64,000 bases of DNA, taken from assembly GCA_024137785.1 (NCBI GenBank), contig JAHRHZ010000002.1, positions 6,266,451-6,330,450 of the forward strand, written 5' to 3'. The translations under genes and the position numbers were made by a program. Of this stretch, positions 30,399 to 57,299 are shown piece by piece. Within the stretch, counting starts at the first letter, position 1; each line of letters starts with the position of its first letter. The stretch is from Ginglymostoma cirratum (Eukaryota). The notes beneath the pieces were generated by a model that worked only from the letters and a program-made list of their open reading frames with translations, was not told the origin of the DNA and ran no database searches.

Positions 30399-32429
30399 TA
30401 CCCTGCTCCTTGTACTAACCAGTAATGAGCTCCTTGTCCTTCTATAACATACGTAATCCTATCACAATCTTGTGCACCTCTATTAAAGCCCTCCTCAGTC
30501 TCCACTGCTCCAAAGAGGAAATAGCCCACCTTCTCAAATTTAAACTTGCGGATAAAGCCTTTCATCCCTACAACCATTCTTGCAAATTTCCTCTGCAATC
30601 TCAAAGACCCTGAGTTACTTTGTGGAAAGGTGATCTGGAAGCAATATTACAGTTGTGACATATGAATTGGAGCAGGGGTAGACCACTCTGCCCATTGTGG
30701 CTGCTCCGCCACTCACTAAGCTAGTGACTGATCCAACTGCAACCACAAATTCATATTCCTGCCTACCAATCAAAACATTTCACTCTCTCATTTAGTGAGA
30801 ATCTACCTATCTGCATACCCCTGCCTTAAAAATATTCACAGACTCAACTTCAAACTCCAGGATCCTATTATGAGTACCTGAGAGTTCCAAAGGCTTATAA
30901 TCCTCAAAAGGAAAGAACAGCCTAATCTGTTTTTAATTGAGTGACCACTAGTTTTCTTTTTACAGAAAACCTCAACTTCTAGATTCTCCCTGAAGAAACA
31001 TTTGCTCTACATCTACCCTGTCAAGACCTCTCAGGGTTCTATGTTTCAATCAAGTGAACTAATCACATTTTATAAAGATTTAGTTAGCATAGATTCTCTG
31101 CAATATCTATATTTACGACAACCAAGTTTCCACATGCCTTGCTCACCACTCTCAGTCTTGCATGTTAATGTCAAGAATCAAAATGTATGTGTTTCCAGGT
31201 CTGCCATCCTCAGAATTAGTGCTCAGAATTATGCCATTACATTTACGTTTTCTCTTTGTCTCTTTTTCCAATCGTGTCAACTCAGACTTCTCTGCATTAC
31301 ATTCCAAATGCCACTTGTCTAGCCATTAGCTACTCTATGCCCCATTGCAGTTAGTTCGTGTAATTCTTATTGCATTTATCACTTCTCCAAAATTAGTATC
31401 GGTGGCAAATTTTTAAATTTCAACTTGCATTATCATATTCAAGTTATTTATATAGGTCACAAAAAAAGTGACGGTGGAGTTACTGACCCTTAGGGAGCAG
31501 CACTATCACCCTCAAGTCTGAAAAATAACCATTAAGAATGAGTCAATGTTTTCTGAACTGAAAATAATTTTCTATCCAAGCTGACACCAGCCTTCCTATT
31601 CCACTAGTCTAAATTTTGTTAAACAGCCCTTTATGTCGTACTTTTTCAAGCGTTTCTTAAAATTCTTTCCATCCTTTTCCCTTCACCAAATTTAACTGTT
31701 TTTTCAACGGAATATTGAATTGAAATGGTCAGTGATTATCTGTGTTTTACTCATCAATGCCGGCTTTCCTTAATGAAGTCAAACCTCAGCAAATCCTTGT
31801 TTTTATTTTCCCATTCACACAATCTTCAAACAAGCTGTACCTTCAGTCATTTGCTGTAAGCTGTTGTTTAAGTCACCCTTGGCAAATCTGCAGAAGCAAA
31901 ATAATGTCAGTTAGAATGGGAGATAACCCATTAACAGAGAATGAGAACAAAGCAAGTGTGTTTGAATGTAGAGTATGAAATAAATGCAGCAGATCAGGAG
32001 ATAGAAATAAACTTTTGAAGCCTACAATAATCTTTTTAAAAAAAAAAGGATAGGCTTATGCACTAAGTACAAACCGTTAGTGGTCACCATTTTAAAATAT
32101 AAGTAACAACCATAACCTGATATTTCATTTTAAGTTATATGTAGTTGGGTTTACTGAATGAACTAACAATACAACAAGATACAACACAACCAGTCAAAAC
32201 ATTTTAGAACCATCAAATTCATTGCCGTCAGCATCTGATACACAGGTGATAAAATGCATTCGGAGTTATTTTCAGCTATGACATCACTGCAATGTCCGGT
32301 AACAGGAATTTCATGTGCTACCCACAATACGTCTCAACAATACCTAGGCAGAAACACTATATGATGAACAACCATCTACTGTTCGTCTTCTGGGCTCGGA
32401 GAACTTTTCCACCTTCTCAGCAGAATTCC

Positions 32430-39575: not shown

Positions 39576-40290
39576 GAGCAACTCACCCCCGACTCGCCAA
39601 AGCCTGTCTACCCTTGACAAAGGCCAAATCAGGACAGATTTCTTCCTAGATAACATGGTATAGAGCTGGATGAACACAGTAGGCCAAGCAGCATCAGAGG
39701 AGCAGGAAAGCTGACGATTCGGGTCGAGACCCTTCTTCAGAAAATCCTTCAAGGGTCTTGACCCGAAACGTCAGCTTTCCTGCTCCTCTGATGCTGCTTG
39801 GCCTGCTGTGTTCATCCAGCTCTACACCTTGTTATCTCAGATTCTCCAGCATCTGCAGTTCCTACTATCTCTGTAACAAATTTCTTCCTATTTGCCTGGA
39901 TGCGTGCAGGTCCAGAAGTACTCACGAAGCCTGACACCAAAGGACAAACCAGCACCACATCCACCACTGACACAAAGTAGCAGCAGTGTGTACCACTGAC
40001 AAACTGCACTGCAAAATTCACCAAAAATCCGTGGACACCACCTTCCAAATCCACGACCACTTCCATCTAGGAGGACTAGAGCAGGAGGTACACTTGCAAG
40101 TGCCCCTCCAAGCCAGTCACCATCCTGACTTGGAAATCTATCACCGTTCATTCAAATTTGCTGGGACCAAATCTTGGAATTCTCTCCCTAATAGCATTGT
40201 GCATTTACCCAGACCACACTGTTTCAAGAAGCAACAAAATATATGCAAGAAGTGCTGGCCCAACCGGTGAAGTCCATATTCTGTAAATTA
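39576..40290 (+). mobile_element. 3' fragment of the LINE family seen at 45076-48275, split by a PLE hairpin
   Basis: Collinear with 47700-48270 (e.g. caccatcctgacttggaaat). Confidence 0.75.
39649..39875. mobile_element. Palindromic PLE pseudo-LTR element
   Basis: Near-perfect inverted arms of about 90 bp; 15-bp TSD ACA(G/A)ATTTCTTCCTA at 39634-39648 and 39876-39890. Confidence 0.9.
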
Positions 40291-40880
40291 AGTTTTCAAA
40301 AAACAGAATGTGATGGAAATCTGGGATTCACTGCCAAAAAGGGTAGAAGATGCAGGAACCATCAAGACATTTAAGAACTCTTTAATGCAACAAGCCAAGT
40401 GCTGGAAAACAGGATTAGAACAGATATTTATTTGGTGACTGGCACAGGCAAAGTGGGCCAAAGGGACTCTTTCCACATTGTAAAAACTCTCAGCATGAAG
40501 TAAGCAAAACGGGTCTTTCTGGAGTGAAACAAACATTGAGAAACTAATACAAATATTGCATTTTCTCACTGAAAAGGCTGGAGGCAGGTGACGGTTTGGC
40601 TTATACACCGAAAATGCACAAAAGCACGATTTTTGGTACTGTACAAAACAGGGTTATCCTGTATGCCACAATCCAAGGTGCTCACAACAGTGTCAAATAA
40701 GGTACATATAATTTCAAACCTCAGATCTGACCCACCACATTTACCTTTCCAAGACCCATTCAAATGCTGATCAGAGTGCAGAAAACATACAATGACCAGA
40801 CAGTAAGAATGAAAATTCTACTGGACATAGAGTGGGTGTGGGTCTATCACCTCACCTCAACATTCTATCAATTTTTTACC

Positions 40881-40996
40881 TCACCGCAGCCTTTTCCATC
40901 TGATCACTGCAATTATCCCGATAATCACCAATGCAGCAACGACCGACAGCGTTATAATTCTTGCAGTGAAGCTTCTGCTTCTGTCCTCCACTGTTT
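40881..40996 (-). CDS. MHC class I connecting peptide/transmembrane exon with in-exon stop
   Basis: tttttcag|AA acceptor. Encodes ETVEDRSRSFTARIITLSVVAALVIIGIIAVIRWKRLR then TGA (40883-40881): a 19-aa hydrophobic helix followed by a basic stop-transfer. Confidence 0.9.
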
Positions 40997-43900
40997 CTGA
41001 AAAATATTTGAATAATAAGGGAGGTCACTATGTTCCTGAAATCATATTCAAATTCTGTCTTGTTGAAGGATGATTCTAACCAAACCTGCCTGTCCAGAAA
41101 GTGATGCACATACATACCCCACTGATAGAGTTTGGCCTCTGACAGGCTGCTGTGTTCAATTCGACAGGAGTATTGATCCTCATCCCCAGCACTGATTTCA
41201 ATCTCTTTCTGGATCTGAAACGTCCCATCATGGTTCGGCCGAACCCCTGAGGATTGTGTCTTAGTCATGACCTCTCCATTCCTTAGCCAGGTCACTACGA
41301 TTTCTACAGGATAAAATCCACTGACCAGGCACGAGAGAGTGAGAGACTTGTCCTGATGACGGAGTTCACTCTTAGAGATGAACACTTCAGGCTCAACCAT
41401 GATGGGAAAGGGTGAAAACACAAACCATGTATGAAAGGTAATGAGCAGAACTAGGAGAAGTTTCATAGATCTGTACGTGAACAAAATGAAAACATACCTT
41501 TCCTTTCAAAATATTCTTTTCCAACCTCCAAATCCAACAGCAATTGCTCCAGAAATACTTCTTCCAGATGTGTCTTCCAATACTTGGTCCAGGATGCATC
41601 AGAATTCCATTTCTCAGTTGTCACTAATGCACGGTGGCTGGTTGCAATCCATCTCATTCTCTCTGGCTCTAAAATAATATAGTCTTTTCCGTCATACCCA
41701 AAACGCATTGATATCTTAACGGAGCCATCTTCAGTTATTTCAGCACAACTTATCCATTGAAACAGGTGAATTCCTTTCAGTGATGAACAAAGGGATCAAA
41801 AACCAACATTTAATGATACATCACATGCTGTCTGAACAGAGACAACAGGCATCTAATTTCAGGTAGAAATGGGAGCTTAGAGTCAGACCCTGTATCAGAA
41901 AAGGAAGAGGATTCAGTTGAAAATGTATCCCAATTGTTGCTACTGTGAATTCAGGCTGAAAGTCTGAAATTTCTAATCATTTGAACTTGAGTGGTCAGAA
42001 GTCAAACAAAATGGTTATTGGGAAATTACGCATGCAACCAGGATTCAGTGGTCTTAGAAAGGGCCAGTAAACTAATGACAAGTCTTAACTCCCATACATT
42101 AATAGCAAACAACAAATTAATTCCCAAGAAGCTAATAACTTGAATTAATAGTCAACATATTAATCCCAAAATGCTTATATGTGTTGGTTTCAGCAAATTT
42201 ACAACAGGAGTTAACTGCCAGTCAGTGGTTAATTCCCAGATGTTGAAAATAAAGCATTAATTTACAACTTACTAATAATGGGAGATAATTCCTGTTGGTA
42301 GCTGGAAATTAATTCCTACCATGTTAACAACACAAGTCCCCAACATACAAACAGAAGTTTATTCCCAGCACACTATGGGTGGTTTTAATATGCAACACAC
42401 CAACAATGAGAGGTAACTCAAATATCTGAAAGTTAGAAGTTATTCCCAACTGCTGAAGAATATATTTAATTTAAAGTCACTACAGACAATGTGATGAAAT
42501 CTCTCGCTATTTCCACCTTTTCCTTTGCACTAAGCAAGCCAGCAAACTATGGCAATTTCTATTGATAGACAGTTCCAAGTGTTGCTAGGTGCCAACAAAA
42601 GGGAGGGGCTTATCATAGGACTGCAACAGATTACTCAGCACAAAGAATAGCAGTTTAAAATTTTCAGTACCTGACTGTAAGGTCAGCGTGAAGGCGACAG
42701 AGCAGACGGCATGTTAGGAGTCCTGATTTTTAGCTGCCCTACAGCAAAGGCAACTGAACTACGGGATTTCCATGTAGTTGACATATGGAGTTAAGTTCCA
42801 AGAGCAGTTGGGTGTCTGTGTTGTTGGAACCACGGCCAAATTCTCAAAGACATTAGGCAACTAGGTGTTGCCATCAGGGCTTAGGAAAAGTGATGGGAGT
42901 TCACAAGAAACCAGCTGTCACCAATAGGTCAGTACGGCTGAGAGTGATCATTGAAAAACCACCAAGAGTAATTGCTTGATGCAGCTCAGCAAGATGGGAG
43001 AGCTCGGGAAAAACACAAAGAAAAATTCAGCTTGGTAAAGCCTGCCTGAGTTGTGGCAGTGAATCAGTGAATCAGAAACTGCAGTGCTGTTTGCAGAGTC
43101 TGGGGCAGCATGGACCCAGGCAGGAGGGTAACCAACTCTAACAAGAGCAGTCATTGAGGCAATCCATGACAGACCACAAGGCATAGAATCAGAAATAGTC
43201 AATTGGCCCTAAAAGACTGCTTTGCCATTTGATCACTGCTGCTGATAAGTGGCTCAAGAGTGGATTTAAAGACCAGACTAGACCAGCAAAAGCAAAGAAC
43301 TGTAAACCCTTGTGAAGTTCAATGAGATTTATTGACTGACTGCATGTAACCTTAACCTCTGGAGGATTTGCTGAGAAAGCTGTAGGATCTGCCTTGATTG
43401 CATTTGACGCATAATTAAAATCATTTGAGAAGCTGGTGATGAGCTGCCTTTTTGATCCCTGCAATCCTGGTGCTGTAGGTACACCCACAGTGCCGGAGGA
43501 ATTCCAGGATTTTTGACTCAGCAACAGAAAAAGATACGCTGATATTTTTCCAAGTCAGGATGGTGGCTGGCTTGTAGGAGAATTTCCAAGGTGGCAGTGT
43601 TCTGCTGTATCTCTTGCCCTCATCCTTCGAGTCGGAAGTGATTACGGATTTTGAAGGTGCTATCTGAAGATCTTGGAATGCTTGTTCAGAGATCAGCAGA
43701 TGGCAGGACTGATTAATACGGTAGTTAAAAAGGCATATATGATGCTTGCCTTGACTAGTCATGGCACAGATTAGAAGAACAAGGCAGGCATGTTGGAGCA
43801 GGACTGAACATTGGTTAGGCCACAGCTGAAGCACTATGCACTCTTCTGATCACCATCTTCCATGTCATGGGGTTTCATTGTATCCCTTGACCTTCTAGAT

Positions 43901-46900
43901 AGTAGAGATCAGGGGATTGAAAGGTGCTGTCTGAAGGATCTTTGGTGAATTTCTGCAGTGCATCTTGCAGATTATACACACTGCTGCTACTAAGCATGGG
44001 GGAAGAGGTAGTGGTTGTTTGTGGATACGATACCAATAAAGTAGACTGCTTTGGCCTGGATAATGTCAACCCTCTTGATTCTGGAGCTGCACACACCCAG
44101 TCAAGTGGGGAGTATTCCATCACACTTCTCACTATGCCATGTAGATGGGGCTAGGCTTTATGGAGTCAGGATGAGAAGTACTCCACTGGCTTCTGGGCCC
44201 CATTCTTTTCACTCTTGCGTCTCCCCTGTCTCACATCCAGTTTCCCTCTCCTACCGCTGAAGCCCAGTCAAAATTGCACCTTTACCTGTACACTAATTCA
44301 CTGGTGCATGAAAATCACACGTGATAACATCAGTGCTTGGAACTGTGCGTTCCCGAATCAGCACGCACGTGTAGTTTGTCTGCATTTGCCTACTTTTTGA
44401 CGTGTACATGGGGTACCCGATCACAGCCTATTACTCAAATTTAGCACGTTACTTCTGTGTATTAGAAATAAGTTATACATGCATTGTTGATTGAAATACT
44501 GATGTAACTTGTATGGCACTATAAAGGAAGTGTCACCACAGTCCAGAGGACCATAGGGCACAGAAACACAACTGGTAGTGAGCTTAACTCATCTCAGACA
44601 GGGGACAAGGTTGAGAAACTGGGACCTACATAGTAACCTAAGCCAGTGTGGAATATGAACTGTTGGCATCACTCCGCACTGCGAATCTGGCATCCAGACA
44701 ACTGAGCCGAGAAAAGCCACCAAATACAGTGTGGACCCTAAATAACTAAACACACAAAAAGAAAAATGTTAACTGCATTACACTACACAAAAGAACTATT
44801 AGAATGATCTCTGTACAACTTTCAGGAAGAGAGTTGCATCCATTTTTACTCACAGCAATACCCTTACAATCTCCAAATCACAATAGAGAACCATCCTTCT
44901 ATGCATGCTAAAGCTTTTTGCCCAGCAGGCATGGTGTTAACCCAGTTTCCTTTTGGAAAATTTGCTAGCATTCACACAATCCTATCGTCTTTAGTTAAAG
45001 TCTCCCTCTGAAAAGCTTAAGGGAAGCAGAAAATTCAGTCCACTTAACATGGTTTACTTGAGCTCATATCTTTAGGGTAGGCAATGACCTAGTGGTATTT
45101 ATGCTAGACTATTACTCCAGTAACCCAGCTAATGGTCTGGGGACCCAGGTTCGAATCCCACCACAGCAGATGATGGAATTTGAACTCAATAAATAATACA
45201 AAAAAAGGGGAAGAGCCTGGAATTAAGAATCTACTGATCACCATGAAATCATTGCCGATCGTCAGAAAAACCCAACTGGTTCACTTACGTCCTTCAAGGA
45301 AGGACATCTGGTACCCTCACCTGGTCTGGCCTGCATGAGACTCTCAACTGCCCTCTGAAATGGCCTATCAAGCCATTCAGTTGTATTAGTTGCTACAAAG
45401 TAGTGAAATGAAATTGGACAGATCACTTGGCATCAACCTAGGTACTGGGAAAGACAACAGTGGAAACAACTCTGTCGACCCTGATAAATCCTCCTCACTA
45501 ACATCTGGGGGGCGAGTGCCAAAATTGGGAGAGCAATTTCACAGATTAGTCAGACAACAGCCTTACATCGTCTGTAAGGCATCATACTGCGAGAATGACT
45601 ATGCCCCAGACACCACCGTCACCAACCCTGGACATCTCCCGTCCCAGGCAGGACAGATCCAGAGGTGACGGCACGTTGGTGTACAGTCCAGAAGACATTG
45701 TTCTGGGAGTCCTCAACATAGGATCCAGAATGCATGAAATCTCACGGCTTCAGGTTAAACATGGGCAAGGAACCCTCCTGCTGATTACCATATACCATCC
45801 TGCCTCAGCTGATGATTCGGTACTGCTTCACATTGAGCAACACGAAGGAAGCACTGAGATGGCAAGGGCACTTGGGTACTCTGGTTGGAGGATTTCAATG
45901 TCCACCACCAAGAATGGCTCAGCAGCAGCACTACAGATCAAGTTGGTCGGGTCGTAAAAGACATATATGCTAAACTGGATCTGTAGCAGGTGGTGAGGGA
46001 ACCAACAAGAGGGAAAGCATACTTGACCTCATCCTTACCAATCTCCCAGCTTCAGCTGCATCTGACTATGACTGTCTCCACAAGGACTGAGCAATGGTCA
46101 CACTTACCGATACTAAGTACCACCTTCACATTGAGAGTAACTTCCATCGTGTTCTGTGGCACTATCACCAAATGGGACAGAGTTCACACAGATCTAACAA
46201 CTCAAGGCTGGGCATTCATGAGGCACCATGGACCATCAAAAGCAGAATTGTACTTCAGCACAATCTGTAACTTCATGGCCTGGCATATCCCCCACTTAAA
46301 TATTACCATCAAGTCAGTAGTTCAAACTTAGTTCAATGGAGAGTACAGGAGGGCAGGCCTGGAGCAGCACAACACAAAGAGGAGGTGCCAACCACGTGAC
46401 AGACAGCACACCAAACAAAAAAAAAAGCAGCAAGTGAGATACAGAGCTAAGTGATCCCACAACCAACAGATCAGATCTAAGCTCTGTTTATCCTGTCACA
46501 TCCAGTCATGAATGGTGGTGCACAATTAAACAATTCACTAGAGGAGGAGGCTCCACAAATATCCCCATCCTCAACGATGGAAGATCCCAGCACATCACTG
46601 CATTTGCAGCAATCTTCAGCCAGAAGTGCCAAGTGGATGATCCATCTCAGCCTCCTCCAGTTGTCCCCAGCATTACAGATACAGGTCTTCAGCCAATTCA
46701 ATTCACTCCATGTGATATCCACAAGAAACAGCTATAGACACTGGATACAGCAAAGGCCACAGGCCCTGACAACATTCTGGCAATAGTACTGAAGACTTGT
46801 GCTCCAGAAATTCCCGCTCCCCTAGCCCAGCTGTTCCGGTACATTTACAACACTGGTATCTAACCAGTAACGTGGAAAATTGCCCAAGTATGTCCCCTAC

Positions 46901-49900
46901 ACAAAAAGAAGGACAAATCCAACCCAGCCAATTACTGATTCATCAGTCTACTCTCAAATCATCAGTAAAGTGACGGAAGGTGTCATCAACAAGTGCTATC
47001 GAGCAGCAGGTGTCCAGTTTGGGTTCTGCCAGGGGCACTCAGCTCCTGACCTCATTACAGCCTTGGTTCAAATATGGACAAAAGAGCTGAATTCCAGAGG
47101 TGAGGTGAGAATGACAACCCTTGACATCAAGGCTGCATTCGACCAAGCGTAGCATCAAGGAGCCCTAGCAAAACCGCAATCAATGGCTATCAGGGTGCAA
47201 ACTCTCCGGTGGTTGGAGTCATACCTGACACATAGGAAGATGATCGTGGTTGTTAGAGGTTAATCATCTCAGCTCCAAATCATCTTGGCAAGATTTCCTC
47301 AGGTAGTCTCCTTGGCCCAACCATTTTCAGCTGCTTCAATGACTTTCCATCCATCGTAAGGTCAGAAGTGGTGATGTTTGCTGATGACTGCACAATGTTA
47401 AGCAATAATCACGACTCCTCAGATACTGAAGCAGTCCACATTCAAATGCAACAAGATTTGAACAATATCCAAGCTTGGGCTGAAATGAGGCATGTGACAT
47501 TCACACCACACAAATGCCAGGCCATGACTATCACCAATGTGAGACAATCTAACCGCTGTCCCTTGACATTCAATGGTGTTACCATCACTGAATCCCCACT
47601 ATCAATATCCCAGGGGTTATCATTAGCCAGAAACTAAATTAGACTCGCCACATAAACACAGTGGCTACAAGAGCAGGTCAGAAGCTAGGAATACTGCAGC
47701 GAGTAACTCAGCTCCTGACTTCTCAAAGCCTGTCCACCATTTACAAGGCACAAAAGACTTGTGCGAATACTCCCGACTTGCCTGGGGTGGTGGACAATTA
47801 AACAATGACTGCAGCCCCAACAACACTCAAAAAGCTTGACACCATCCAGGACAAGGCAGTCCTTTCGATTGGCACGACATCCACTCCCTCCACCATCGAC
47901 ACTCAGTAGCAGCAATATGTACTATCTACAAAATGCACTGCAGAAATTCACCAAAGATCCTCAGAGAGCACCTTCCAAACCCATTTCCATCTAGAAGGAA
48001 AAGGGCAGCAGACATATGGGAACACCACCACCTTCAAGTTCCCTTCCAAGACACTCATCATCCTGACTTGGAAATATATCACTGTTCCTTCACTGTCACT
48101 GGGTCAAAATCCTGGAATTCCCTCCCTAATGGCATTGCGGGGTCGATCTACAGCCGGTGGACTGCAACAGTTCAAGAAGGCAGCTCAGCACTAGCTTCTC
48201 AAGGGCAACTAGGGACCGACAAGAAATGTTGGCCGGCTAGCAACGTCCACATCCCACAAATGGTTAAAAAAAAAAGGCCTCATAGGATGTATTCCTCTTG
48301 GATAGTCCATTTAGCGAGTGGAACTTACTCCCCCAGCCCCAATTGTTTGGAGACTGCTCATAAAAGCATCTCCTCTCTCTGACTGGGCCTGCTTCTGTTC
48401 CTCTTTCTCAGTGTTTTGCTGGAGGTCATAAACCTCAAGTCAGCAAACTCCTAAGCAATTATCTCCCTAGTAGCATGCATTTTGTTAGAAGCCACAAAAC
48501 TCCATGCAAGTGCTGGTTTTTACTGTGTTAAAAAGGATGGTGACGTTCAAAAAAGGTCTGATATTCTCAGACTTAAATCTACATTCCCTTGAGAACAAAG
48601 TCTCAAAAATAATATACGAACATTCATAGCACAAGGTTTTTGAAATAGCTCATGATTTAAAAAAAGTTCAGAAGATGACGGTGGGAATGACTGATCCTAC
48701 TCAGAAACTCTATTCCTTACAGAAAGCTTCAACCCAGTATCCCAGCGCGATGGCTCAGTGGTTAACACTGTGCCAGGAACCCAAGTTCCATTCCACCATG
48801 GGTCAAATTGTTTGTGTGGAGTTTACACATTCTCTCCGTGTCTACACGGGTTTCCTCCAGGTGCTCCAAAGAATTGCAGGTTAGGTAGCTTGCCTGTGCT
48901 AAATTGCCCAAAGTGTTTACTTGGCTTAGCCATGGGAAATGCAGGGTTACAGGGACAGAAAAGGGGGTGGGTCTGGGCAGGATGCTCTTTGGAAGATCGG
49001 TGTGGGGATTTCGTGTGGTCAGTAAGTTTGCAAATGATACCCAAATTGCAGATGTAGTTAGTACAACAGGATCCTGATCAGATGGGCCAATGCGCCGAGT
49101 GGCATATGGAGTTTAAATTTAGATAAATGTGAGATGTTGCATTTTGGAAAGGCAAGTCACAGCAAGACTTATATACTTAATGATAAGGTCATGGGGAGCG
49201 TTGCTGAACAAAAAGACTTTGCAGGTTCATAGTTCCTTGAAAAATGGAGTCACAGGTAGATAGGATAGTGAAGGCGGCATTTGGTACGCTTGCCTTTATT
49301 GGTCAGTGCATTGGGTATAGGGAGTCGCATTGCAGCTGTTCAGGACATTGGTTAGGCCACCATTAGAATACTGCATGTAATTCTGGTCTCCATGCTATAG
49401 GAAGGATGTTGTGAAACTTGAAAGGGTTCAGAAAAGATTTACAAGGATGCTGCCAGGGACAGAGTGAGAGCTACAGGGAGAGACTGAATAGGCTGGGGCT
49501 ATTTTCCCTGGAGCGTCAGAGGCTGAGGGGTAACTTCATAGAGGTTCATAAAATTATGAGGGACATAGATATGTTAAGTAGACAAGGTCTTTTTCCTGGG
49601 GTGGGGGAGTCCCTAGAGAGTAGAGGCTGAAGGAGAGAGGGGAAAGATGTAAACAGGACCTAAGGGGCATCTTTTTCACACAGAGGGTGGTGGTATGTAT
49701 GGAATGAGCTGCCAGAGGAAGTGGAGGAGGCTGGTACAATTACAACATTTAAGAGGCATCTGGATATGTGTACGAATAGGAAGGGTTTAGAGGGATAAGT
49801 GCCAAATTCTGGCAAATAGGACTAGATTAATTCAGGGTATCTAGTTGGCATAGGTGAGTTGGATCAAACGGTCTGTTTCCGTGCTGAACATCCCTACGAC

Positions 49901-52900
49901 CCTAAATCATTTGGTTGCTGGGTCATTAAGTTATGTTATTGGACAGTGAATGCAGATATACAGTGTATGGAGTAGATTATTGAAAGGTAACATTTTAAGC
50001 AATGCAGCCCAAATTAAGTCTAAGGAAATTGCTAATGCTGCGAGCTTCAGGTTTGTAGTTGACCAGAAACATTTAATAAAAAAAATTAAAATTCCAAACA
50101 AACTAGCTGGGGTAAACACTTACCAACATGAATTTACAAACAGGAACAGCAGTAGGCCATTAGGCCCCTTTACCCTTACCTGACAATTAATAAGGTGGTG
50201 GTTGATCTGATTACAATCTTAAATCCATGCTTACCCATGACAACATTTCATTCTCAATCCATATAAATGCCTTAGGTGTCTTAAAAATATTCAAGGACTC
50301 TGCTTCCACCACCTCATCAGGAACGGAGAGTTCCAAAACTCTCGACTTCACGATAAAAAAGAGTTTCTTCTCATCTCAGTTTCAAATGTGACCACTTATT
50401 TACTAACAGTAAGCCCTAATTCTGAGATCTGCCATAAGAAGTCTGCAGTATAAATGTTGTTGACTGTATTGTGCATTGTATCTCACTGACATTGATTCAA
50501 AAGGACAGTCAACTTGATCTTACCAGATGTCTGGTTCATCCCCTTCATTATTGTATGGAGATTCTCCTTTGCTATAGTTGAATGTGAATTTGCAATATCG
50601 GTGACAACGTTCCAAGTTTCCATGCCAAAAGAGTCTTCCATGAACTTCTGCCTGGGAATCATTCGCTGGATCTTTGTATCGTGATAATTAAGTTGAATTC
50701 CTTTCACAATTGCAATGTTCATCACGTCAGGAAAGTCATCAATGCCAGAGACTGCCATGTACAGCACTGTCAATGAATTAGAGTCTATAAAACAAATATA
50801 AAAAGGGGAAAGAGGCAGATTATCAGCCATGCACACTGACGACCATCAACGGTTTACCGACAGTGCCAATCTCCAATAATCAACCACTTCCTTGCACTGT
50901 CAGAATTCTGTCTGATATTAGAAACAAAATCATCTCAAACTGGGTCAGAATTAGACGACTGCAGTCTCTCAGAACAAGGGGAAAGCATGGAAACAGAGTG
51001 ACAAAGAAACCCAATTGATGTAGATGTGGGGTGGGTATTGGGTCGTAAATAGAAGATCTCAAATTTACAGTTATTACTTCAGATATTCTCACCTCTCTAA
51101 TTCAAAGATAATCTGGGACACCCTGGATCTGTGACTAACCTAGAACAGCAATGAGTTAAAGCTAACTTGAGGAAACCTTTGGAGAAAGACAGTGAGGTGA
51201 TCCTTCTCGTGAGGGAACATTTGGAGTTAGGAATTCAGGATAATCCAAGGGCAGGTCTGTGGTTTATCACCATAACCAGGAAGGGAACTGTGTCAGTGAA
51301 TCTGGATTGTTGGATCTCCACTATCCTTCAGAGCTGTTTAACTTTTTATGCATAGGCAGTCAAATACTGCTGGTGTGAGATAATCTGTCCTATTCAATCG
51401 TGAGGGCATCACTTCTGAACCTGGGGTGGGTTAAACACAAACTATCCTTCTCTCAGCAGTGTTTAGAAGACTTGAGACCAGGAATGAAGAAGTTGTTCCG
51501 TTTCTCTCAAATGATATTGTCATGGGCCAGACCAGAGTTCCTCAAAATATTTAACAAGGTAGTGCAAACTCTAACTTTTTCTTATTTTAAAAAGGTATAT
51601 GTGAAGTGTGTTCCAGATGCAATGCAATTGGTCAAATTACTGGATATTAAGCAAAACACAATTTGTTTACATACTATAATTAAAATACCAACAAAAGAAA
51701 GAGGAATTTAGAATAACTTAACTATTGGGGAACTTAACTGAACAATAGCTACAGTAACTATTGCTAATTAATTGTTCCAATACAGTAACATCCCATCAAC
51801 ACACCCCTTGGGGAAAAAGGGAAGTTCGGACACACAGATTCTTATATGCTGTTCTCCAAGCCAGGAGGAAAAACATTCAGTGAAATTTCAGAGAAAGTAG
51901 CAACTAGGAATCATTCACTGAAGCTCCCAACTTTGCTGAGACCCCAAACAGCTTCTGACTGCTGAAAAAAAAACAGAAATCCTGATCTGAGAGAGTTGGC
52001 CACACCCATTCAGGCTGTTTTAAAAACAAACCGAAGGCTTCACAAGTGTTTTACTCTCATGGTTCTGGTATACTGCTCCACACCACTACCTTTACAATTT
52101 CACTTTAAAGAAAAAGGAAAAAAAAAACCTTTTAAAGTGATAGCATCATCACAATATGAAAATTAAAACTGTCCATCTGAACCATCTTCAGCGTGCTCTG
52201 ACCTTCTCTGATCTCAGGGTTTCTACACCCTGCTGTTTGGAGACCTGGACACAAAGCCCATCACAGTCTTCCGTAAGACCATGAGAAACAGGAACAGGAG
52301 TAGACCAATTGACCCCTCAAGTTGCTCCAACATTCAACAGGATCCTGGCTGATCTGACATTCTTTATGTCCAATTTCTTGCCATTTCCTATAACCCCTGA
52401 TTTTCCAAAGAAATCAGGATTCTATCAATCGCAGTCTTAAAGATAAAATAACTCTACCCACCGCAGCTCTCTGTGGCAAGGAATTCCAGAGACTCACAAC
52501 ACTCAGAAGAAATGCTTTCTCAGCTCAACCCTAAATTGGAAGCCTTTATCCTGAGACAGACATCCTTAGACAACACCTTCCAAATCTATGACCATTTCCA
52601 TTCCTATCTGCAAGTTCCCTTCCAAATCACTCACAATTCTCACTTGGAAATACGCTGGCGTTCATTCACTGCTGCTGGGTCAAAATGCCAGATTCCCCTC
52701 TCTAACAGCATTGTGTCTACCCACTACAATACAAGGAGACAGGTCATCACCACCTTCTCAAGGGTAAGTACGTATAGGCAATAAATGCTGCCCAGTCAAT
52801 GATGCCCACATCCCATGGGAGAATAAAAATAACTATGTCCTGTGCTCCTAAACTCTCCCATGAGGGGAATCATCCTCTCAGGTCTGTTTCTAATGGACAG

Positions 52901-53019
52901 AGTGCACGCACGCAATTGAGTGACTGCAATAGAAAGAGAGGAATTGGAAGGCTGTTTTTGTACTTACCAGCATAGACCCATGGAAAACACAGGGAGATGG
53001 AGAAAACGATCAGCAACAT
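40881..53019 (-). CDS. Non-classical MHC class I heavy chain gene (5 coding exons, 984 nt, 327 aa); possibly a defective allele or young pseudogene because of the alpha3 acceptor lesion
   Basis: Exons of 52+261+276+279+116 nt are joined by phase-1 introns and encode leader, alpha1, alpha2, Ig-C1 alpha3 and TM with no internal stop or frameshift. All donors are GT; acceptors are AG except before alpha3 (GG). The shark lineage (UBA/UCA/UDA/UEA/UFA etc.) cannot be assigned without a phylogeny. Confidence 0.93.
41118..41396 (-). CDS. MHC class I alpha3 (Ig C1) exon
   Basis: Encodes VEPEVFIS...LSCLVSGFYPVEIVVTWLRNG...RPNHDGTFQIQKEI...YSCRIEHSSL...YQW, 279 nt, with G|GTATGT donor. The expected acceptor reads catgg rather than catag. 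Confidence 0.95.
41498..41773 (-). CDS. MHC class I alpha2 exon
   Basis: aag|GA acceptor and G|GTATGT donor, 276 nt. Encodes GIHLFQWISCAEITEDGSVKISMRFGYDGKDYI...TTEKWN...HLEEVFLEQLLLDLEVGKEYFERK, with H93, Q96, YDGKDY and T143/K146/W147. Confidence 0.95.
43424..44175 (-). mobile_element. Fragments of the same CR1/L2-group LINE 3' end, with a CR1 piece in between
   Basis: Reverse-complement similarity to 47740-48200. Confidence 0.65.
44520..44712 (-). mobile_element. Second tRNA-derived SINE family
   Basis: Minus-strand head GGCTCAGTTG..GGATG...GATGCCAACAG, short body. Confidence 0.5.
45076..48275 (+). mobile_element. CR1/L2-group LINE (EN + RT, frameshifted) with a tRNA-derived SINE-like 5' head and A-tail
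   Basis: A box TGACCTAGTGG (45085-45095) and B box GGTTCGAATCC (45148-45158). EN VPKLGEQFHRLVRQQP and DFNVHHQEWL; RT QFGFCQGHSAPD, LDIKAAFD and MFADDCT. A-run at about 48266-48275. Confidence 0.85.
48742..49030 (+). mobile_element. HE1-type SINE (degenerate)
   Basis: tggctcagtggttaacactg head and tgtgtggagtttacacattctc core. Confidence 0.8.
49065..49900 (+). mobile_element. CR1 LINE 3' end
   Basis: SYRERLNRLGLFSLERQRLRG and CR1 tail. Confidence 0.9.
50524..50784 (-). CDS. MHC class I alpha1 exon
   Basis: ttttatag|AC acceptor and G|GTAAGA donor, 261 nt. Encodes DSNSLTVLYMAVSGIDDFPDV...RMIPRQKFM...ETW...KENLHTIMKGMNQTSG, with conserved W60 and the N86 glycosylation site NQT. Confidence 0.93.
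51374..52153 (-). mobile_element. Solo LTR in MHC intron 1, same family as 4480-5324
   Basis: TGTGA...TCACA termini; shared blocks ttccagatgcaa..attggtcaaa and acaaaagaaaga.gaatt. Confidence 0.7.
52968..53019 (-). CDS. MHC class I leader (signal peptide) exon, coding part
   Basis: ATG at 53019 gives MLLIVFSISLCFPWVYA, then G|GTAAGT (phase-1 donor). Hydrophobic core ending V-Y-A, a signal peptidase-type site. Phase matches the alpha1 exon. Confidence 0.88.
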
Positions 53020-53974
53020 TCTGGAAATCCACTCTCCCTATTCCAATCAGAGACCAGGAATTAAACTCCGAGTGATAGGAAAACAACTGTATGTAAACCA
53101 GAGGAAAAAAAAACAACCCATTTTATTGGACTTTATTTTAACAAAACTTGAACTGTACAGCCAGGAGGGTGAATAATTGGTTAGGCTTAGAAAAAAAACC
53201 ATTTAAAGAGGAATAAACAGCAGACTGTCATCAGTTACCAGGAAGATCAAAGTCAGGCAGCTTTTGAGCTTCTGAGATGAACGCAGAGAATCCTGGAGAA
53301 ACTCTGCACGTCTGGCAGCAACTGTGCAGACAGAGTTAATATTTTGAGTCCAGAACAACTGTTTCTCATAAATAGGCCGATTGGGAAAAGGTGAAGTACA
53401 TTTAGTTACAAGCTGGCTCACAGGGAATGAATGGCTGCCTGGGTGCCGTTTAAAAATAAGGCCAAGACTTTTCGGTACAGGATGTACTATGCAGAGAAAA
53501 GACTTCCGGCCTGCATGCCCCAACCCCACCCACCAATATGCAAATTTGCCAATCTACTTGCACCTACCTAATTACTAAGCTGAGAGTCTCATGATCTCAA
53601 GAGACCACTTGCCCCAAAGGAAAAGCCACATCCAAAGGCAAACTTGATATCCAGAATGAAACATTTCATCTGAAGATTTGTGATAACAGACCTTATCTGC
53701 CAGCCCCAGAGCAAACGAAAAGGCACCAGTATCTCTGGTTCCACCCCAGCCCACTGTACGCCCAATTAACACTGACACTGGTCCTCCTTCTCCTCCGCAA
53801 CCTCGATACTGACTCTGGTTGGACCGGGGCTATACTAGAACAAATTACAGTCAGACACCACCATTGACATTGTGAATGATCACACAGAGAAATTCATTAA
53901 GCAGGAAGGAAGTGGTGCAGAAAATTGCTCAGCTGTACCCCACCCACACACACATACAAAGGAACTCAGCAAAG

Positions 53975-54300
53975 ATCTGAAACATGCAAAAACAAACTGA
54001 TGCAAAAACTCAGCAGAGCTGTAGAGAGAATTCAGAGCTAACATTTCGAGTACACCGACTCTTCTTCAGAACTGATAACAGCATAAATACCACCTTTTCC
54101 TAGCTGTCGGGCCGGTGGTGGGGGGTGGGGGGGGGGGGGTGGTGGGGGAGGAGAAAGAGAGGAGGAGGGGGAAGGGAGGGGGAAAGAGATGGGGTGGGGG
54201 GTGGGGAGGTGGGAGGGTGTGATTAAAGGGCAGGCAGACAAAGGGTTTGTTGCTAACAAGCCAGGGAGCAATCAAACCAGGGCAGAAAACATGCTTGATA
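53975..54300 (-). mobile_element. PLE 3' remnant with hammerhead-like core and G-rich tract
   Basis: Minus strand CTGAAGA-AGAGTCGGTGTACTC-GAAATGTT near 54040-54070; purine tract similar to 15620-15890. Confidence 0.6.
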
Positions 54301-54864
54301 AGTGATAATAGGGGTTATGAGTGGGTGAAAATTGTTATGCTAGTTTGAAAGCAACCTGAAACCTGAAAGCCAAAGAACTGATTTGACTAGTTATATTCCT
54401 GTCTTTTCACTTTCAGAAGGTATCATCAATAATACTGCAGAAGAACATTTACACAGCAATAACCTGCTCACTGATGCCTAGTTTTGAGTTCAGCCAAAGT
54501 TACTAATCTCAATGTCATGTTTGACTCAATGCGGACAAAAAACTGGTGCAGTACGAGCGACCGCACAGGCTTGTGTGAAGATCTATTAACCCCCCTCTCA
54601 CCAACAGAGCAGGCGACTACTACGACATGAACTTTACATGTCAGAGGTTCGGATGAACAGTGAACCCCTTCGTGTTAACAGGTGAGGGAAAGACCATCCT
54701 CACAGCGTGAACATACTGGTGTGTGTAAATGGGGTGGGCAACTGTATCCCTTGCCATGCACAGAATAGGCAATAGTGTGGCTAAGTTGATGAATTCCCAT
54801 CTTGAATGTATAATCCAATCCGTTCGCACTGTCCCCACATTTCCAGCAATTCTCCATAGTGTGG

Positions 54865-55810
54865 TCATTAGAACCATTGAGTTGTACAGCACGGAAACAG
54901 ATTCTTCCATATAACTCGTCCATGCCGACTCAATATCCTAAATTAATCTAGTCTCATTTGCCAGCATTTGATCTATATCCCCCTCAACCCTTCCTATTCA
55001 TATAAACATCCACATGCCTGTTAAATATATTCCATGCAATCTAACCTTGCTAACCAGTCTATCATGAGGAACCTTGTTGAACGCCTGACTGACGTCCGTA
55101 TAGATCACTTCCACCGCTCTGCCTTCATCGATCCTCTTCGTTACTTCTTAAAAAAAAAACTGCATTGAGGTTGAGAAAGATGAGCACATATAATTTATAG
55201 GGTGACAGAGTTTTTACAGCATAGAAGACCTCTTCAGCCCATTGTGTCCACATGGACCATCAACCATCTATTCTGATCCCATTTTCCAGCATTTGGATCA
55301 TAGCCTTGTATGCTATGGTGTTTCAAGTGCTCATTCAAATGCTTCTTGAATTTATTGGATCTATCATCTTTTTAGGTAGCGAGTTCCAGATACCCACCAC
55401 CATTTGGGTCAATGCTATTTTTCAAATTTTCTCAAGACTTCTTGTTCCTTACTTTAAAACTGTGCCTCCAGTTATTGACAACTCTACGGATGAGGAAAGT
55501 TCTATATCTATATCCTTCATAATTTTGTACACTTCAATCAGGTGCCCCCTTAGGCTTCTCCGCTCTAAGAAAAACATCCACTGCTCATCTCGTCCTCGTT
55601 CATAGCTGAATCACTCCACTCCAGGGAACATGCTAGTCAATCTCCTCTGCTCCCTCTCAAGTGCAAATCACAACCTTCCAAAAGTGTGGTAACAATTACT
55701 GTGCACAGCACTCCAGTTTGGAGCTAAACAACATTATATACAGCTCCACCAAAACTTCCTTGCTCTTGAATTCAGTGCCTTGACTATTAAAGGCAAGTAT
55801 TCCAAGTATC
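54865..55810 (-). mobile_element. CR1 LINE fragments
   Basis: CR1 tail and RT-region similarity. Confidence 0.7.
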
Positions 55811-56384
55811 ATTTTAATACCTAACACTAATTTCCAGTCCCTCACAATACTAATTTGTTCTTATTTTCACAGCCGCTGAGGCAGTCATTAATGGCTTTGT
55901 GCAGGGTCATTTAATTACTACAGCAGAGGGGAAACTTCAGTGTTTCAGACACAGTATTCCAGGTAAGATGGACAGAGATTTGGGAAATGACAACACATTC
56001 AAGTATTTTGGACAGAACAAGAAGGTTGGAGTCAGGTTGTAGTTTTCAGAGACAGAAGGGTCATTAGTTTTTTTTGTAGGACTGGAGTGACAACAATGCC
56101 AATTTTTGAAGAAAACAGGGACAGACATTTTAAAAAAAAAAAACAAAGCAGTGGTCAATATATAAGCTAAAACAGGGAAAGAATGTTTTACGAACAGCAA
56201 TGCACAAGAAGTAGTATCAAGGAAGCAGGAGGTGGGTCTCACAAGATAGATGCGCTGGCAGACAGCATGAGTGGAGAGATGACCTGGATGTACTCTAATA
56301 TTACACTTTAAGAATACCAGCCACTATAAATTTCCAGCACTATATACTGCAATGACAGAAAACCCAGTACTGAAATCTGCAGAC

Positions 56385-56732
56385 ATGGAATCCTTACAGT
56401 GTAGAAGCAGGCTATTTGAACCATCGAGTGCACACTGACCCTCCGAACAACAAGCCACCCAGACCCACACGACTACCCTATCCTTGTAACCCTGCATATC
56501 CCATGGCTAATCCAACTAGTCTGCACATTCCTGGACACTATGGCAATTTAGCATGGCCAACCTATCTAACATGCACATCTTTGGTTGTGGGAGAAAACCA
56601 GAGCACCCAGTGGAAACCATGCAGACGTGGGGAAAATGTGCAAACTGCACACAGACAGACAGATTGCCCAAGGCTGGAATCAAACTCGGATCCCTGGTGT
56701 TGTGAGGCAGCAGTGCTAACCACTATGCCACC
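56385..56732 (-). mobile_element. HE1-type SINE
   Basis: gtgaggcagcagtgctaaccac head (reverse complement) and HE1 core. Confidence 0.9.
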
Positions 56733-57299
56733 TAAGTTATCTATTTCCTTTTGAAGATTCCTTGTGTCATTTTCACAATTTATTCTGAGTTATCCTTGTT
56801 CACCATCCTAACAACTCCAAGATGATGAGAATGCTAAAATCAAAGCATTGATAATTTTAGATCTATTATTGAAATTCATTTGAAGTACTTACGGCTAGCT
56901 GCACTGTGAGGAAAAGTGTTCTTGGAGCAGTCAGGATCAAACAACAGTCAAGTCACGGCCACTGTGTCAAAACAAAGATGGAAACAGGAATAGCTGGAGT
57001 ACGGAAAGTGAGATACCATACAACAGAGTACAAAAACCCTCAAAGACCACCTCTCCCGACCATCACCTGAATCAATAGTCAATCCTCCATCTTCCAAATC
57101 TAAACAGCAGATCAGAAGAGATTAGGACAAACCTTACACTATGGTGTGCAGCATTTAATTATGCAATTTGACATCACATGCTGGACAATCCCAATTGTGT
57201 GAAGACATTTATGAATGACTAATTTAAAATAATCAGTAATATTTGCAGAGTGGCTCACTCACACACAACAGAATCCACATAAATTCAAATGCAAGGCCC

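What the first reader, a model, noticed from the sequence alone, without database searches (positions are those of the whole stretch)
41498..50784. Non-classical MHC-I groove with all N-terminal anchors lost, C-terminal anchors kept and an aromatic-filled cleft
Seen, using HLA-A2 numbering from a manual alignment: Y7>V, Y59>T, E63>V, Y159>H, W167>Q, Y171>D and Y/R84>G, while Y123, T143, K146 and W147 are retained. Groove-facing positions carry Y9, F95, W97, M114, F116, W152, Y155 and W156. Established: those tyrosines bind the peptide N-terminus in classical class I, and sharks have several non-classical lineages, some with hydrophobic grooves. The beta2m-contact residues Q96, D119-G120, D122, R234-P235, D238 and Q242 are intact. 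Inference: a beta2m-associated molecule that binds a non-peptide ligand (small aromatic metabolite or lipid, MR1/CD1-like by convergence) or has a half-open groove. It may be an uncharacterised sub-lineage.
Basis: partly seen in the sequence, partly recalled or inferred. Interest (0 to 1): 0.78.

Follow-up and report, generated by a model that had tools for sequence, protein, structure and literature searches.

The report
Fast-evolving shark UEA-type class I gene
This is a real, transcribed non-classical MHC class I gene of a shark, but its unusual binding groove is mostly a shared trait of a large, already annotated shark gene family, and the copy in this genome has a damaged splice site.

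Summary
A five-exon class I gene lies on the minus strand: leader, alpha1, alpha2, alpha3 and TM, 327 codons. RNA contigs confirm the alpha1-alpha2, alpha3-TM and TM-to-next-exon junctions.

The gene is not a new lineage. Separate alpha1 and alpha2 trees both nest it in one sublineage of a shark-only multigene family. That family has 80 annotated members in 13 species and is most likely the published UEA lineage. An earlier follow-up of this scan (s1-879974) reached the same family verdict for two genes 1.47 Mb away.

- **Family or sublineage traits:** V7, Y9, hydrophobic 63, loss of R84, F95, W97, M114, F116, W152, Y155, W156, H159, loss of W167, loss of the alpha2 disulfide, and retained Y123, T143, K146, W147.
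- **Private to this gene:** T59, Q167, D171, C100.
- **"Aromatic-filled" is not distinctive:** 10 aromatics at 42 groove positions, against 10-16 in the family and 14-15 in classical UAA.

The gene evolves 5-7 times faster than its relatives but still spares conserved columns. It has lost its cytoplasmic tail to a stop codon. In the reference allele the alpha3 acceptor is GG, and two RNA data sets retain that intron while a third splices it.

Ligand and function are untested.

The parts
52968..53019 (-). Candidate leader exon (coding part): 17 codons MLLIVFSISLCFPWVYA plus one base, donor G|GTAAGT, phase 1; joined to alpha1 it gives Asp
   Evidence: Best of the scored ATG/hydrophobic/phase-1-donor candidates in 50785-58000. 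Close match to the signal peptides of family members such as P0003. Not checked with reads.
50524..50784 (-). Alpha1 exon (261 nt, phase 1 at both ends); N86-Q-T glycosylation site kept
   Evidence: Sequence and splice sites. Pfam MHC_I E 4.5e-5. The loose ends of RNA contigs X1 and X2 at 41774 are an exact match to 50525-50554, so this exon is spliced to alpha2.
41774..50523 (-). Intron of 8.75 kb between alpha1 and alpha2, filled with repeats including reverse-transcriptase fragments
   Evidence: ORFs. RVT_1 hits at 46880-47152 (E 0.0081, below Pfam's cutoff) and 47368-47637 (E 1.4e-5). Removed in RNA contigs X1 and X2.
41498..41773 (-). Alpha2 exon (276 nt); A101 and F164 in place of the disulfide cysteines, private C100
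   Evidence: Pfam MHC_I 2.8e-14. Residue table. Covered by polyA RNA reads X14 and by contigs X1 and X2.
41397..41497 (-). 101-nt intron with a GT donor and a GG acceptor. If retained, the frame reads 11 more codons (GMFSFCSRTDL) and then stops.
   Evidence: Sequence. Joint 41396/41498 with ends GT..GG on the gene strand is seen only in the X2 contig (depth 81.7). The X1 contig runs straight through 41189-41774. In X14 the intron bins have depth about 3.5 against 4.8-5.8 in the flanking exon bins, and no joint is listed.
41118..41396 (-). Alpha3 exon (Ig C1-set); beta2m-contact stretch R-P-N-H-D-G-T-F-Q
   Evidence: Pfam C1-set 2.3e-18. Up to 83% identical to family alpha3 domains. RNA coverage.
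40880..40996 (-). Connecting-peptide and transmembrane exon. The in-frame stop TGA at 40881-40883 leaves a tail of RWKRLR only.
   Evidence: Joint 40996/41118 (GT..AG) in 8 X14 reads and in an X2 contig. The exon ends at 40880, shown by loose ends in X14 (7 reads), X1 and X2. Sequence. No differing letters in the X2 contig over 40880-40996.
31841..31887 (-). Next exon, now 3' UTR: a relic of the family's cytoplasmic exon (family DSPSVTYTTAQ..., here DLPRVT*TTAYSK*)
   Evidence: The 30-letter loose end at 40880 matches 31858-31887 exactly.

Best explanation
This is a transcribed non-classical MHC class I gene. It is one fast-evolving member of a large shark-only multigene family, most likely the published UEA lineage, and it sits inside an existing sublineage of that family.

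Shown:
- The exon structure, and three of its splice junctions seen in RNA.
- Family and sublineage placement.
- Which groove residues are shared and which are private.
- Loss of the cytoplasmic tail to a stop codon.
- A GG acceptor before alpha3, with intron retention in the RNA data sets that match the reference allele.

Inferred mechanism. When correctly spliced, the gene encodes a beta2m-associated, membrane-anchored, nearly tail-less molecule. The N-terminal (A-pocket) tyrosine cluster is gone (V7, T59, H159, D171). The floor is bulky and hydrophobic (F95, W97, M114, F116) and the alpha2 helix carries W152, Y155 and W156. It therefore cannot hold a peptide by both termini. The T143/K146/W147 triad is kept, as in most of the family. 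That is compatible with a ligand anchored only at the F-pocket end or with a hydrophobic non-peptide ligand. The ligand is unknown.

The reference allele mostly yields an intron-retaining mRNA with an early stop, so it is a null or weak allele. Another individual's transcripts are spliced exactly at that site, which suggests that the splice defect is polymorphic.
For: Class I identity:
- Pfam MHC_I and C1-set on the separate exons.
- Hits to solved class I chains.

Family:
- The alpha2 exon finds shark proteins at 55-62% identity.
- A search with Heterodontus P0003 lists 124 proteins. The hits with at least 50% identity that carry a species name come from 13 shark species; one further hit (P0242, JGI) is unnamed.
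- 80 of the 263 stored proteins meet the family cut (at least 50% identity over at least 250 aa, under 470 aa), with 2 to 14 per species.
- In the alpha2 tree the family is a starred clade (SH-aLRT 97, branch 0.75) that includes this gene.

Sublineage:
- The gene falls in a 9-row clade in alpha1 (support 90) and an 11-row clade in alpha2 (support 89).
- Both clades hold the same genes: P0172, P0178, P0184, P0192, P0174, P0185, P0208 and the first unit of P0152.

Shared residues, out of 80 family members:
- V7 49 (Y 0), Y9 61, L/I/V at position 63 74, F95 44, W97 54, M114 76 of 76 filled, F116 56.
- T143 60, K146 70, W147 79, W152 78, Y155 62, W156 79, H159 30, V at position 101 71.

RNA:
- polyA reads X14 cover alpha2, alpha3 and TM.

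Constraint:
- This gene differs at 7 of 78 columns that are at least 95% conserved in the family, all conservative changes. It differs at 76 of 192 variable columns (Fisher p 2e-7).
- A substitution-only simulation gives P = 0.02 for no stop in alpha1-alpha3 if the whole excess branch were neutral.
- The tail relic has 2 stops in 16 codons, while the 327 codons upstream have none.

Literature (passages seen):
- UEA is multicopy and lies in a class Ib cluster (PMC10751288).
- UBA and UEA are the two expanded shark families, and UEA is the older (PMC12562908).
Against: - No sequence labelled UEA was available in any tool, and the primary UEA paper is not held. The UEA label therefore rests on elimination plus a recalled abstract.
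- The gene has the longest terminal branches of its clade: 0.48, 0.45 and 0.16 against medians of 0.098, 0.095 and 0.022.
- It also has the highest rate of changes at conserved columns. None of the 77 members evaluated reaches its 9% (median 1.3%, maximum 7.5%). Constraint is therefore relaxed, and alpha3 is affected as much as the groove.
- The reference allele has a GG acceptor. X1 retains the intron completely, and X14 shows no junction reads there.
- Expression is low, about 5-10 reads deep in the 1.9 billion letters of X14 that were read. X15 gave no reads.
- The acceptor letter in the X2 animal was not seen, so the polymorphism is inferred.
- If only a quarter of the excess branch were neutral, an open frame would be unsurprising (P = 0.28).
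- beta2m association, surface expression and any ligand are untested.
Confidence: 0.65

Rival explanations
1. It is a pseudogene in early decay. The gene lost its tail to a nonsense change and then its alpha3 acceptor. Its odd private groove residues (T59, D171, Q167, C100) are drift, not adaptation. The transcripts are residual and are destroyed by nonsense-mediated decay.
For: - GG acceptor, with intron retention in X1 and apparently in X14.
- Stop codon inside the TM exon, and a decayed tail exon with two stops.
- Terminal branches 5-7 times the family median in all three domains, including the normally conserved alpha3.
- The highest rate of changes at family-conserved columns among the 78 sequences compared.
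- No close ortholog found: best identities are 65% (alpha1), 69% (alpha2) and 83% (alpha3).
Against: - No stop or frameshift in 327 codons, and gap-free alignment to the family.
- Substitutions avoid conserved columns (7/78 against 76/192, p 2e-7), and the seven exceptions are conservative.
- P = 0.02 for an open frame if all the excess divergence were neutral.
- The X2 contig is fully spliced at the expected site at depth 81.7.
- A tail-less class I molecule can still work (general knowledge).
Confidence: 0.25
2. It is the founder of a functionally new sub-lineage with a rebuilt A pocket. An acidic D171 with T59, H159 and V7 replaces the tyrosine cluster. It presents a new class of small or lipid ligand, by convergence with MR1 or CD1.
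For: - T59, D171 and Q167 occur in 0 of 80 family members.
- Groove hydropathy is above the family mean (0.38 against 0.23) and only 3 groove residues are charged, against 6-7 in UAA.
- The long branch could reflect positive selection.
Against: - Both domain trees nest it inside an existing sublineage.
- Its groove hydropathy is within the family range, and 25 of 73 members score higher.
- The acceleration is as strong in alpha3 as in the groove domains. That points to general relaxation, not groove-directed selection.
- It has the fewest aromatic groove residues in the family.
- The reference allele is splice-defective.
- The fold search does not separate MR1, classical class I and YF1.
Confidence: 0.1

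Closest known systems
UEA lineage of shark non-classical class I (Almeida et al. 2021, J Immunol: paper not held, abstract recalled; passages seen in PMC10751288 and PMC12562908)
   Same: - Multicopy and found in sharks only. The species-named hits with at least 50% identity come from 13 shark species, with none from rays or chimaeras.
- The peptide-termini residues are not conserved, and the groove is more hydrophobic than in UAA.
- It is a clade separate from UAA-like genes and from the clade that holds Callorhinchus and the nurse-shark entry QGX07421.1.
   Different: - No UEA-labelled sequence could be compared, so identity with UEA is inferred.
- This gene adds private changes (T59, Q167, D171, C100), lacks a cytoplasmic tail, and carries a GG acceptor in the reference allele.
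Annotated sublineage genes: P0174 (Chiloscyllium punctatum), P0185 and the first unit of P0152 (Hemiscyllium ocellatum), P0208 (Stegostoma tigrinum), P0192 (Pristiophorus japonicus), P0172 and P0178 (Cetorhinus maximus), P0184 (Carcharodon carcharias); NCBI names them 'F10 alpha chain-like' or 'uncharacterized'
   Same: - Same clade in the alpha1 and alpha2 trees.
- Same V7, Y9, F95, W97, M114, K146, W147, W152, Y155, W156 and H159 (T143 in all but P0178, which has I), with no alpha2 disulfide.
   Different: - Only 51-56 of 86 alpha1 residues and 52-63 of 91 alpha2 residues are identical.
- They keep Y59, and all but the Stegostoma gene (T) keep Y171. Most of the full-length models (P0174, P0185, P0172, P0178) have the DSPS.TYTTA cytoplasmic exon.
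Shark and ray UFA and UGA, CD1-like class Ib genes (PMC10751288 and PMC12562908, passages; structures unpublished according to those texts)
   Same: Non-classical, MHC-linked, with a hydrophobic groove.
   Different: They are described as single- or low-copy genes shared by sharks and rays. This gene belongs to a multicopy family found in sharks only. No labelled UFA or UGA sequence was compared.
Mammalian MR1 and CD1, and chicken YF1
   Same: Class I fold. A model of family member P0174 aligns to MR1, classical class I and YF1 at Z 24.1-24.8.
   Different: About 30% identity and no specific relationship; the rows are tied. On the landmark alignment the residue at the MR1 Schiff-base lysine position is Q. 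Both the lysine position and the alignment there are recalled or manual.
Classical shark class I, UAA (Triakis scyllium P0256, P0258, P0086)
   Same: Same domain layout, the N86 glycosylation site, beta2m-contact residues, T143/K146/W147 and W156.
   Different: Y7, Y59, R84, Y159, W167, Y171 and the C101-C164 pair are all absent here. Family members share 33-35% identity with UAA.

Membership tests
UEA (shark multicopy class Ib) | Large multigene family within each shark genome | tested here: met
   80 family proteins (clusters at 90% identity), 2-14 per species, in 13 shark species. Isoforms may inflate these counts.
UEA (shark multicopy class Ib) | Present in sharks, not detected in rays or chimaeras (recalled from the 2021 abstract) | tested here: met
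   The species-named hits with at least 50% identity are from sharks; one (P0242, JGI) is unnamed. The Callorhinchus hit is at 30% and falls in another clade. This holds only for the database that was searched.
UEA (shark multicopy class Ib) | Invariant peptide-termini residues not conserved; groove more hydrophobic than UAA | tested here: met
   Y7 in 0 of 80 and Y159 in 14 of 80. Mean hydropathy over 42 groove positions is 0.23 in the family and 0.38 here, against about -0.05 in UAA.
UEA (shark multicopy class Ib) | Lies in the class Ib cluster near UDA, beta2m and brd2 (PMC10751288) | tested here: inconclusive
   The 64-kb window holds only this class I gene, repeats and a 7TM fragment. Earlier notes of this scan place other class I genes 0.28-1.47 Mb away; I did not check them.
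UEA (shark multicopy class Ib) | Clusters with named UEA reference sequences and one of their three sublineages | not testable with these tools
   No protein or 57 carries the name UEA. The primary paper is not held and supplements are closed.
Classical class I (UAA) | Conserved residues that bind the peptide termini (Y7, Y59, R/Y84, T143, K146, W147, Y159, Y171) | tested here: not met
   V7, T59, G84, H159 and D171; only T143, K146 and W147 are kept.
Classical class I (UAA) | Alpha2 disulfide C101-C164 | tested here: not met
   A101 and F164 here. In the family, position 101 is V in 71 of 80 and never Cys.
CD1-like UFA/UGA | Single- or low-copy gene shared by sharks and rays | tested here: not met
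   The gene nests in the multicopy family found in sharks only. The description of UFA and UGA comes from PMC12562908.
MR1 | Lys43 that forms a Schiff base with the ligand (recalled) | tested here: inconclusive
   On a manual landmark alignment (P47 equivalent) the aligned residue is Q. The alignment of this loop is ambiguous, and a Lys lies two residues upstream (sequence).
MHC class I fold, beta2m-associated | MHC_I platform plus C1-set alpha3 with beta2m-contact residues | tested here: met
   Pfam hits on the separate exons. Q96, D119, G120, D122 and the R-P-x-x-D-G-T-x-Q stretch are present. The association itself was not tested.

The most novel reading that the evidence does not exclude
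This gene may be a private, fast-evolving offshoot of the UEA-type family with a remodelled A pocket: an acidic D171 with T59, H159 and V7 in place of the tyrosine cluster. It may segregate in the population as a working allele and a splice-null allele. That would be a functional presence/absence polymorphism of a class Ib gene in a shark, possibly tied to a ligand not bound by its relatives.
Probability: 0.12. Interest if true: 0.5.

Novelty: new member of a known kind. Interest (0 to 1): 0.25.

Why it matters
It matters little beyond annotation. The result shows that the striking groove is a family trait of shark UEA-type genes and not a discovery in this gene. It adds one divergent, tail-less member, expressed at a low level, to that family.

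Two modest points of interest remain. First, the family as a whole keeps the T143/K146/W147 triad while discarding the N-terminal tyrosine cluster and the alpha2 disulfide. That is a clear, testable hint about how its unknown ligands are held. Second, there is an apparent splice-site difference between individuals. It could serve as a natural knock-out for studying one family member.

Tried and rejected
- **Pfam, first attempt.** Corrected coordinates came and the search was repeated.
- **Primary papers.** The two primary papers on shark UDA and UEA are not held. Four literature searches gave only two papers with short passages on UEA, UFA and UGA. A search for the PDB codes 9CH4 and 8GM8 found only unrelated texts, so what those entries are stays unknown.
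- **Other copies in the window.** tblastn of the exon translations against the window found no second class I gene.
- **Cytoplasmic exon.** tblastn of family tails against the window did not find it. The RNA loose end did.
- **Alternative acceptor.** An in-frame AAG lies 9 nt downstream of the GG. No such joint is listed, so I dropped it.
- **Solved structures.** None belongs to the family. The best profile hits are ordinary class I chains.
- **Structure and fold search.** A model of the natural relative P0174 has a platform pLDDT of about 81-94, but alpha3 is only 51-74. The fold search ties MR1, classical class I and YF1, so it says nothing about the ligand.
- **Joined model.** All searches, alignments and trees used the exons apart. 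Pocket volume for this gene was therefore not computed.
- **Supplements.** Supplementary tables of PMC10751288, which may list UEA gene coordinates, could not be seen and might settle the UEA label.

Full report
**What is there**

The finding's two ends are exon boundaries of a minus-strand gene. Reading the minus strand gives the following exons:
- An alpha1 exon at 50784-50524, with acceptor ttttatag| and donor G|gtaag.
- An alpha2 exon at 41773-41498.
- An alpha3 exon at 41396-41118.
- A connecting-peptide and transmembrane exon at 40996-40880.
- A candidate leader exon at 53019-52968. It encodes MLLIVFSISLCFPWVYA and ends in a perfect phase-1 donor G|GTAAGT. It closely matches the signal peptides of the relatives found later.

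Searched exon by exon, Pfam gives MHC_I for alpha1 (E 4.5e-5) and alpha2 (2.8e-14), and C1-set for alpha3 (2.3e-18). The solved-structure search returns class I chains for both platform exons. The window holds no second class I gene.

**The observation**

The alpha1 and alpha2 exon translations align without gaps to classical Triakis UAA (P0256). I placed HLA-A2 numbers on landmark motifs of that sequence; the numbering is recalled.
- Lost anchors: V7, T59, V63, G84, H159, Q167, D171.
- Retained: Y123, T143, K146, W147.
- Groove: Y9, F95, W97, M114, F116, W152, Y155, W156.
- beta2m contacts: Q96, D119, G120, D122 and the alpha3 stretch R-P-N-H-D-G-T-F-Q.

The phrase 'aromatic-filled cleft' does not hold as a distinction. 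Over 42 groove positions the gene has 10 F/W/Y residues. Family members have 10-16 (73 of 80 could be scored) and classical UAA has 14-15. None of the 73 has fewer aromatics than this gene. What does differ from UAA is a bulky, uncharged floor (F95, W97, F116 against L95, R97, D116) and fewer charges (3 against 6-7).

**What it belongs to**

- A search of 1.84 billion representative proteins with the alpha2 exon found shark proteins at 55-62% identity well ahead of all other single-copy matches.
- A second search used the best of these, Heterodontus P0003, residues 1-290. It listed 124 proteins with E up to 1e-10. The hits with at least 50% identity that carry a species name come from 13 shark species, with none from rays or chimaeras. 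One such hit (P0242, JGI) is unnamed.
- Of the 263 proteins then stored, 80 met my family cut: at least 50% identity over at least 250 residues and under 470 residues. A further 45 aligned below 50%. Longer tandem-fusion models were left out of the table but entered the trees as separate units.
- The 80 are spread at 2 to 14 per species.
- In the alpha2 tree the family, including this gene, is a starred clade (SH-aLRT 97, branch 0.75). It is separate from the UAA-like genes and from a clade that holds Callorhinchus and the nurse-shark GenBank entry QGX07421.1.

Passages in two papers bear on the name. UEA is multicopy and lies in a class Ib cluster (PMC10751288). UBA and UEA are the two expanded shark families, and UEA is the older (PMC12562908). 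From memory of the 2021 abstract, UEA is restricted to sharks, lacks the invariant residues and has a hydrophobic groove. By elimination the family is most likely UEA. No sequence carrying that name could be compared, and the primary paper is not held. An earlier follow-up of this scan reached the same conclusion for two genes 1.47 Mb away.

**Shared and private residues**

Counts out of 80 family members:
- V7 49, and Tyr in none.
- Y9 61; L, I or V at position 63 74; F95 44; W97 54.
- M114 in all 76 filled rows; F116 56.
- Y or F at 123 71; T143 60; K146 70; W147 79.
- W152 78; Y155 62; W156 79; H159 30.
- V at position 101 71, with Cys in none.
- No Trp at 167.

The two domain trees, built separately, put the gene in the same small clade. 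In alpha1 it is a 9-row clade with support 90. In alpha2 it is an 11-row clade with support 89. Both hold the same annotated genes of Cetorhinus, Carcharodon, Pristiophorus, Chiloscyllium, Hemiscyllium and Stegostoma, plus Heterodontus in alpha2 only.

In the six sublineage genes displayed, V7, Y9, F95, W97, M114, K146, W147, W152, Y155, W156 and H159 are uniform, and T143 is present in all but one (P0178 has I). Private to this gene are T59 (family F 38, Y 30, T 0), D171 (Y 54, R 17, D 0), Q167 (0) and C100 (0). A101 is shared with only 1 of 80 members.

**Rate and constraint**

- The gene's terminal branches are 0.48 (alpha1), 0.45 (alpha2) and 0.16 (alpha3). The medians are 0.098, 0.095 and 0.022. 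That is 5 to 7 times faster in all three domains, not only in the groove.
- Best identities to any stored protein are 65%, 69% and 83%.
- The divergence is not random. At the 78 columns that are at least 95% conserved in the family the gene differs at 7, all conservative changes. At the 192 variable columns it differs from the majority at 76 (Fisher p 2e-7).
- Its 9% is still the highest. None of the 77 members that could be evaluated reaches it (median 1.3%, maximum 7.5%).
- A substitution-only simulation gives P = 0.02 for no stop in alpha1-alpha3 if the entire excess branch were neutral. It gives 0.28 if only a quarter were.

**RNA**

Of 15 runs offered I laid four on 39900-42100.
- PolyA raw reads (X14): 109 reads laid out of 12.9 million records read, many of them on a repeat at about 40034-40195. 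They cover the TM, alpha3 and alpha2 exons at about 5-10 reads. X15 gave none.
- The alpha3-TM intron (41117-40997, GT..AG) is spliced in 8 X14 reads and in an X2 contig.
- Loose ends at 41774 in the X1 and X2 contigs match 50525-50554 exactly, so alpha1 is spliced to alpha2.
- Loose ends at 40880 in X14 (7 reads), X1 and X2 match 31858-31887 exactly.

The TM exon therefore ends at 40880, one base after an in-frame TGA (40883-40881). The next exon (31887-31841, good acceptor and donor) is now untranslated. In the old frame it reads DLPRVT*TTAYSK*, against the family's DSPSVTYTTAQ.... It is a decayed relic of the cytoplasmic exon. The protein thus ends ...IRWKRLR.

**The alpha3 acceptor**

The 101-nt intron between alpha2 and alpha3 ends in GG, not AG; a separate first-reader note on this window also says so. 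The three RNA sources behave differently:
- The X2 contig (depth 81.7) is spliced exactly there, and the X2 depths show no intron coverage at all.
- The X1 contig (depth 39.8) runs unbroken from 41189 to 41774 although it is spliced to alpha1.
- In X14 the two bins that contain the intron have depth about 3.5 against 4.8 and 5.8 in the flanking exon bins, and no joint is listed. The listing threshold is 3 reads.

X2 also differs from the reference at 41298 (a Val to Ile change in alpha3), while X1 and X14 do not. The simplest reading is a linked difference between alleles: the reference-type allele fails to splice and the other allele splices. Retention adds 11 codons and then a stop. By the usual rule that makes the mRNA a target of nonsense-mediated decay.

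**How it most likely works**

From a spliced mRNA the product would be a beta2m-binding, membrane-anchored, nearly tail-less class Ib molecule. Its groove cannot hold a peptide N-terminus. It keeps the T143/K146/W147 triad and is lined with hydrophobic residues. This fits a ligand held at the F-pocket end only, or a hydrophobic non-peptide ligand. That is the same guess one would make for the whole family, and nothing here tests it.

No solved structure belongs to the family. A model of the natural relative P0174 has a confident platform (pLDDT about 81-94) and matches MR1, classical class I and chicken YF1 equally well (Z 24.1-24.8).

**Verdict**

The interpretation as a new sub-lineage is not supported. 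This is a new, divergent member of a known kind, with relaxed but not absent constraint, a lost tail and a probably polymorphic splice defect. A decaying pseudogene remains a serious rival (about one in four).

The organism is a shark. The alpha3 domain sits nearest to the orectolobiform genera Stegostoma and Rhincodon.

Noticed in passing
window 7103-7789 (-): ORF of 228 aa with a partial rhodopsin-family 7TM match (PF00001, E 7.2e-10, profile positions 27-189 of 260). It is probably a fragment or relic of a GPCR gene.
   Followed up: partly
window 40034-40195: A short stretch downstream of the TM exon has very high depth in the RNA contig sets (thousands in X1), with fixed differences from the window and many loose ends. 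It looks like a dispersed repeat expressed from many copies and not part of this gene's mRNA.
   Followed up: no
window 41298: C>T difference in the X2 contig only (a Val to Ile change in alpha3). It marks a second allele, the one whose transcripts are spliced at the GG site.
   Followed up: partly
window 34502-34901 and 19951-20350: Two runs of 400 N. The first lies inside the 9-kb intron between the TM exon and the tail-relic exon. They were left as they are.
   Followed up: no
window 46880-47637 (+) and 24144-24557 (+): Reverse-transcriptase fragments inside the alpha1-alpha2 intron: RVT_1 at E 1.4e-5 (47368-47637) and a weaker hit at E 0.0081 (46880-47152), both below Pfam's cutoff. There is also an LTR-retroelement RNase H fragment (RT_RNaseH_2, 8.9e-12) further upstream. 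The window is repeat-rich and gene-poor.
   Followed up: partly
proteins P0151 (611 aa, Mustelus asterias) and P0152 (694 aa, Hemiscyllium ocellatum): These annotated models each contain two complete class I units of this family in tandem. They are most likely neighbouring genes fused by the annotation pipeline.
   Followed up: no
PDB entries 9ch4 and 8gm8: Class I-like chains of 268 and 265 residues with uninformative names hit the alpha1 exon weakly (E 7.8e-5 and 0.021). They may be other fish or shark class Ib structures, but no paper naming them was found.
   Followed up: partly
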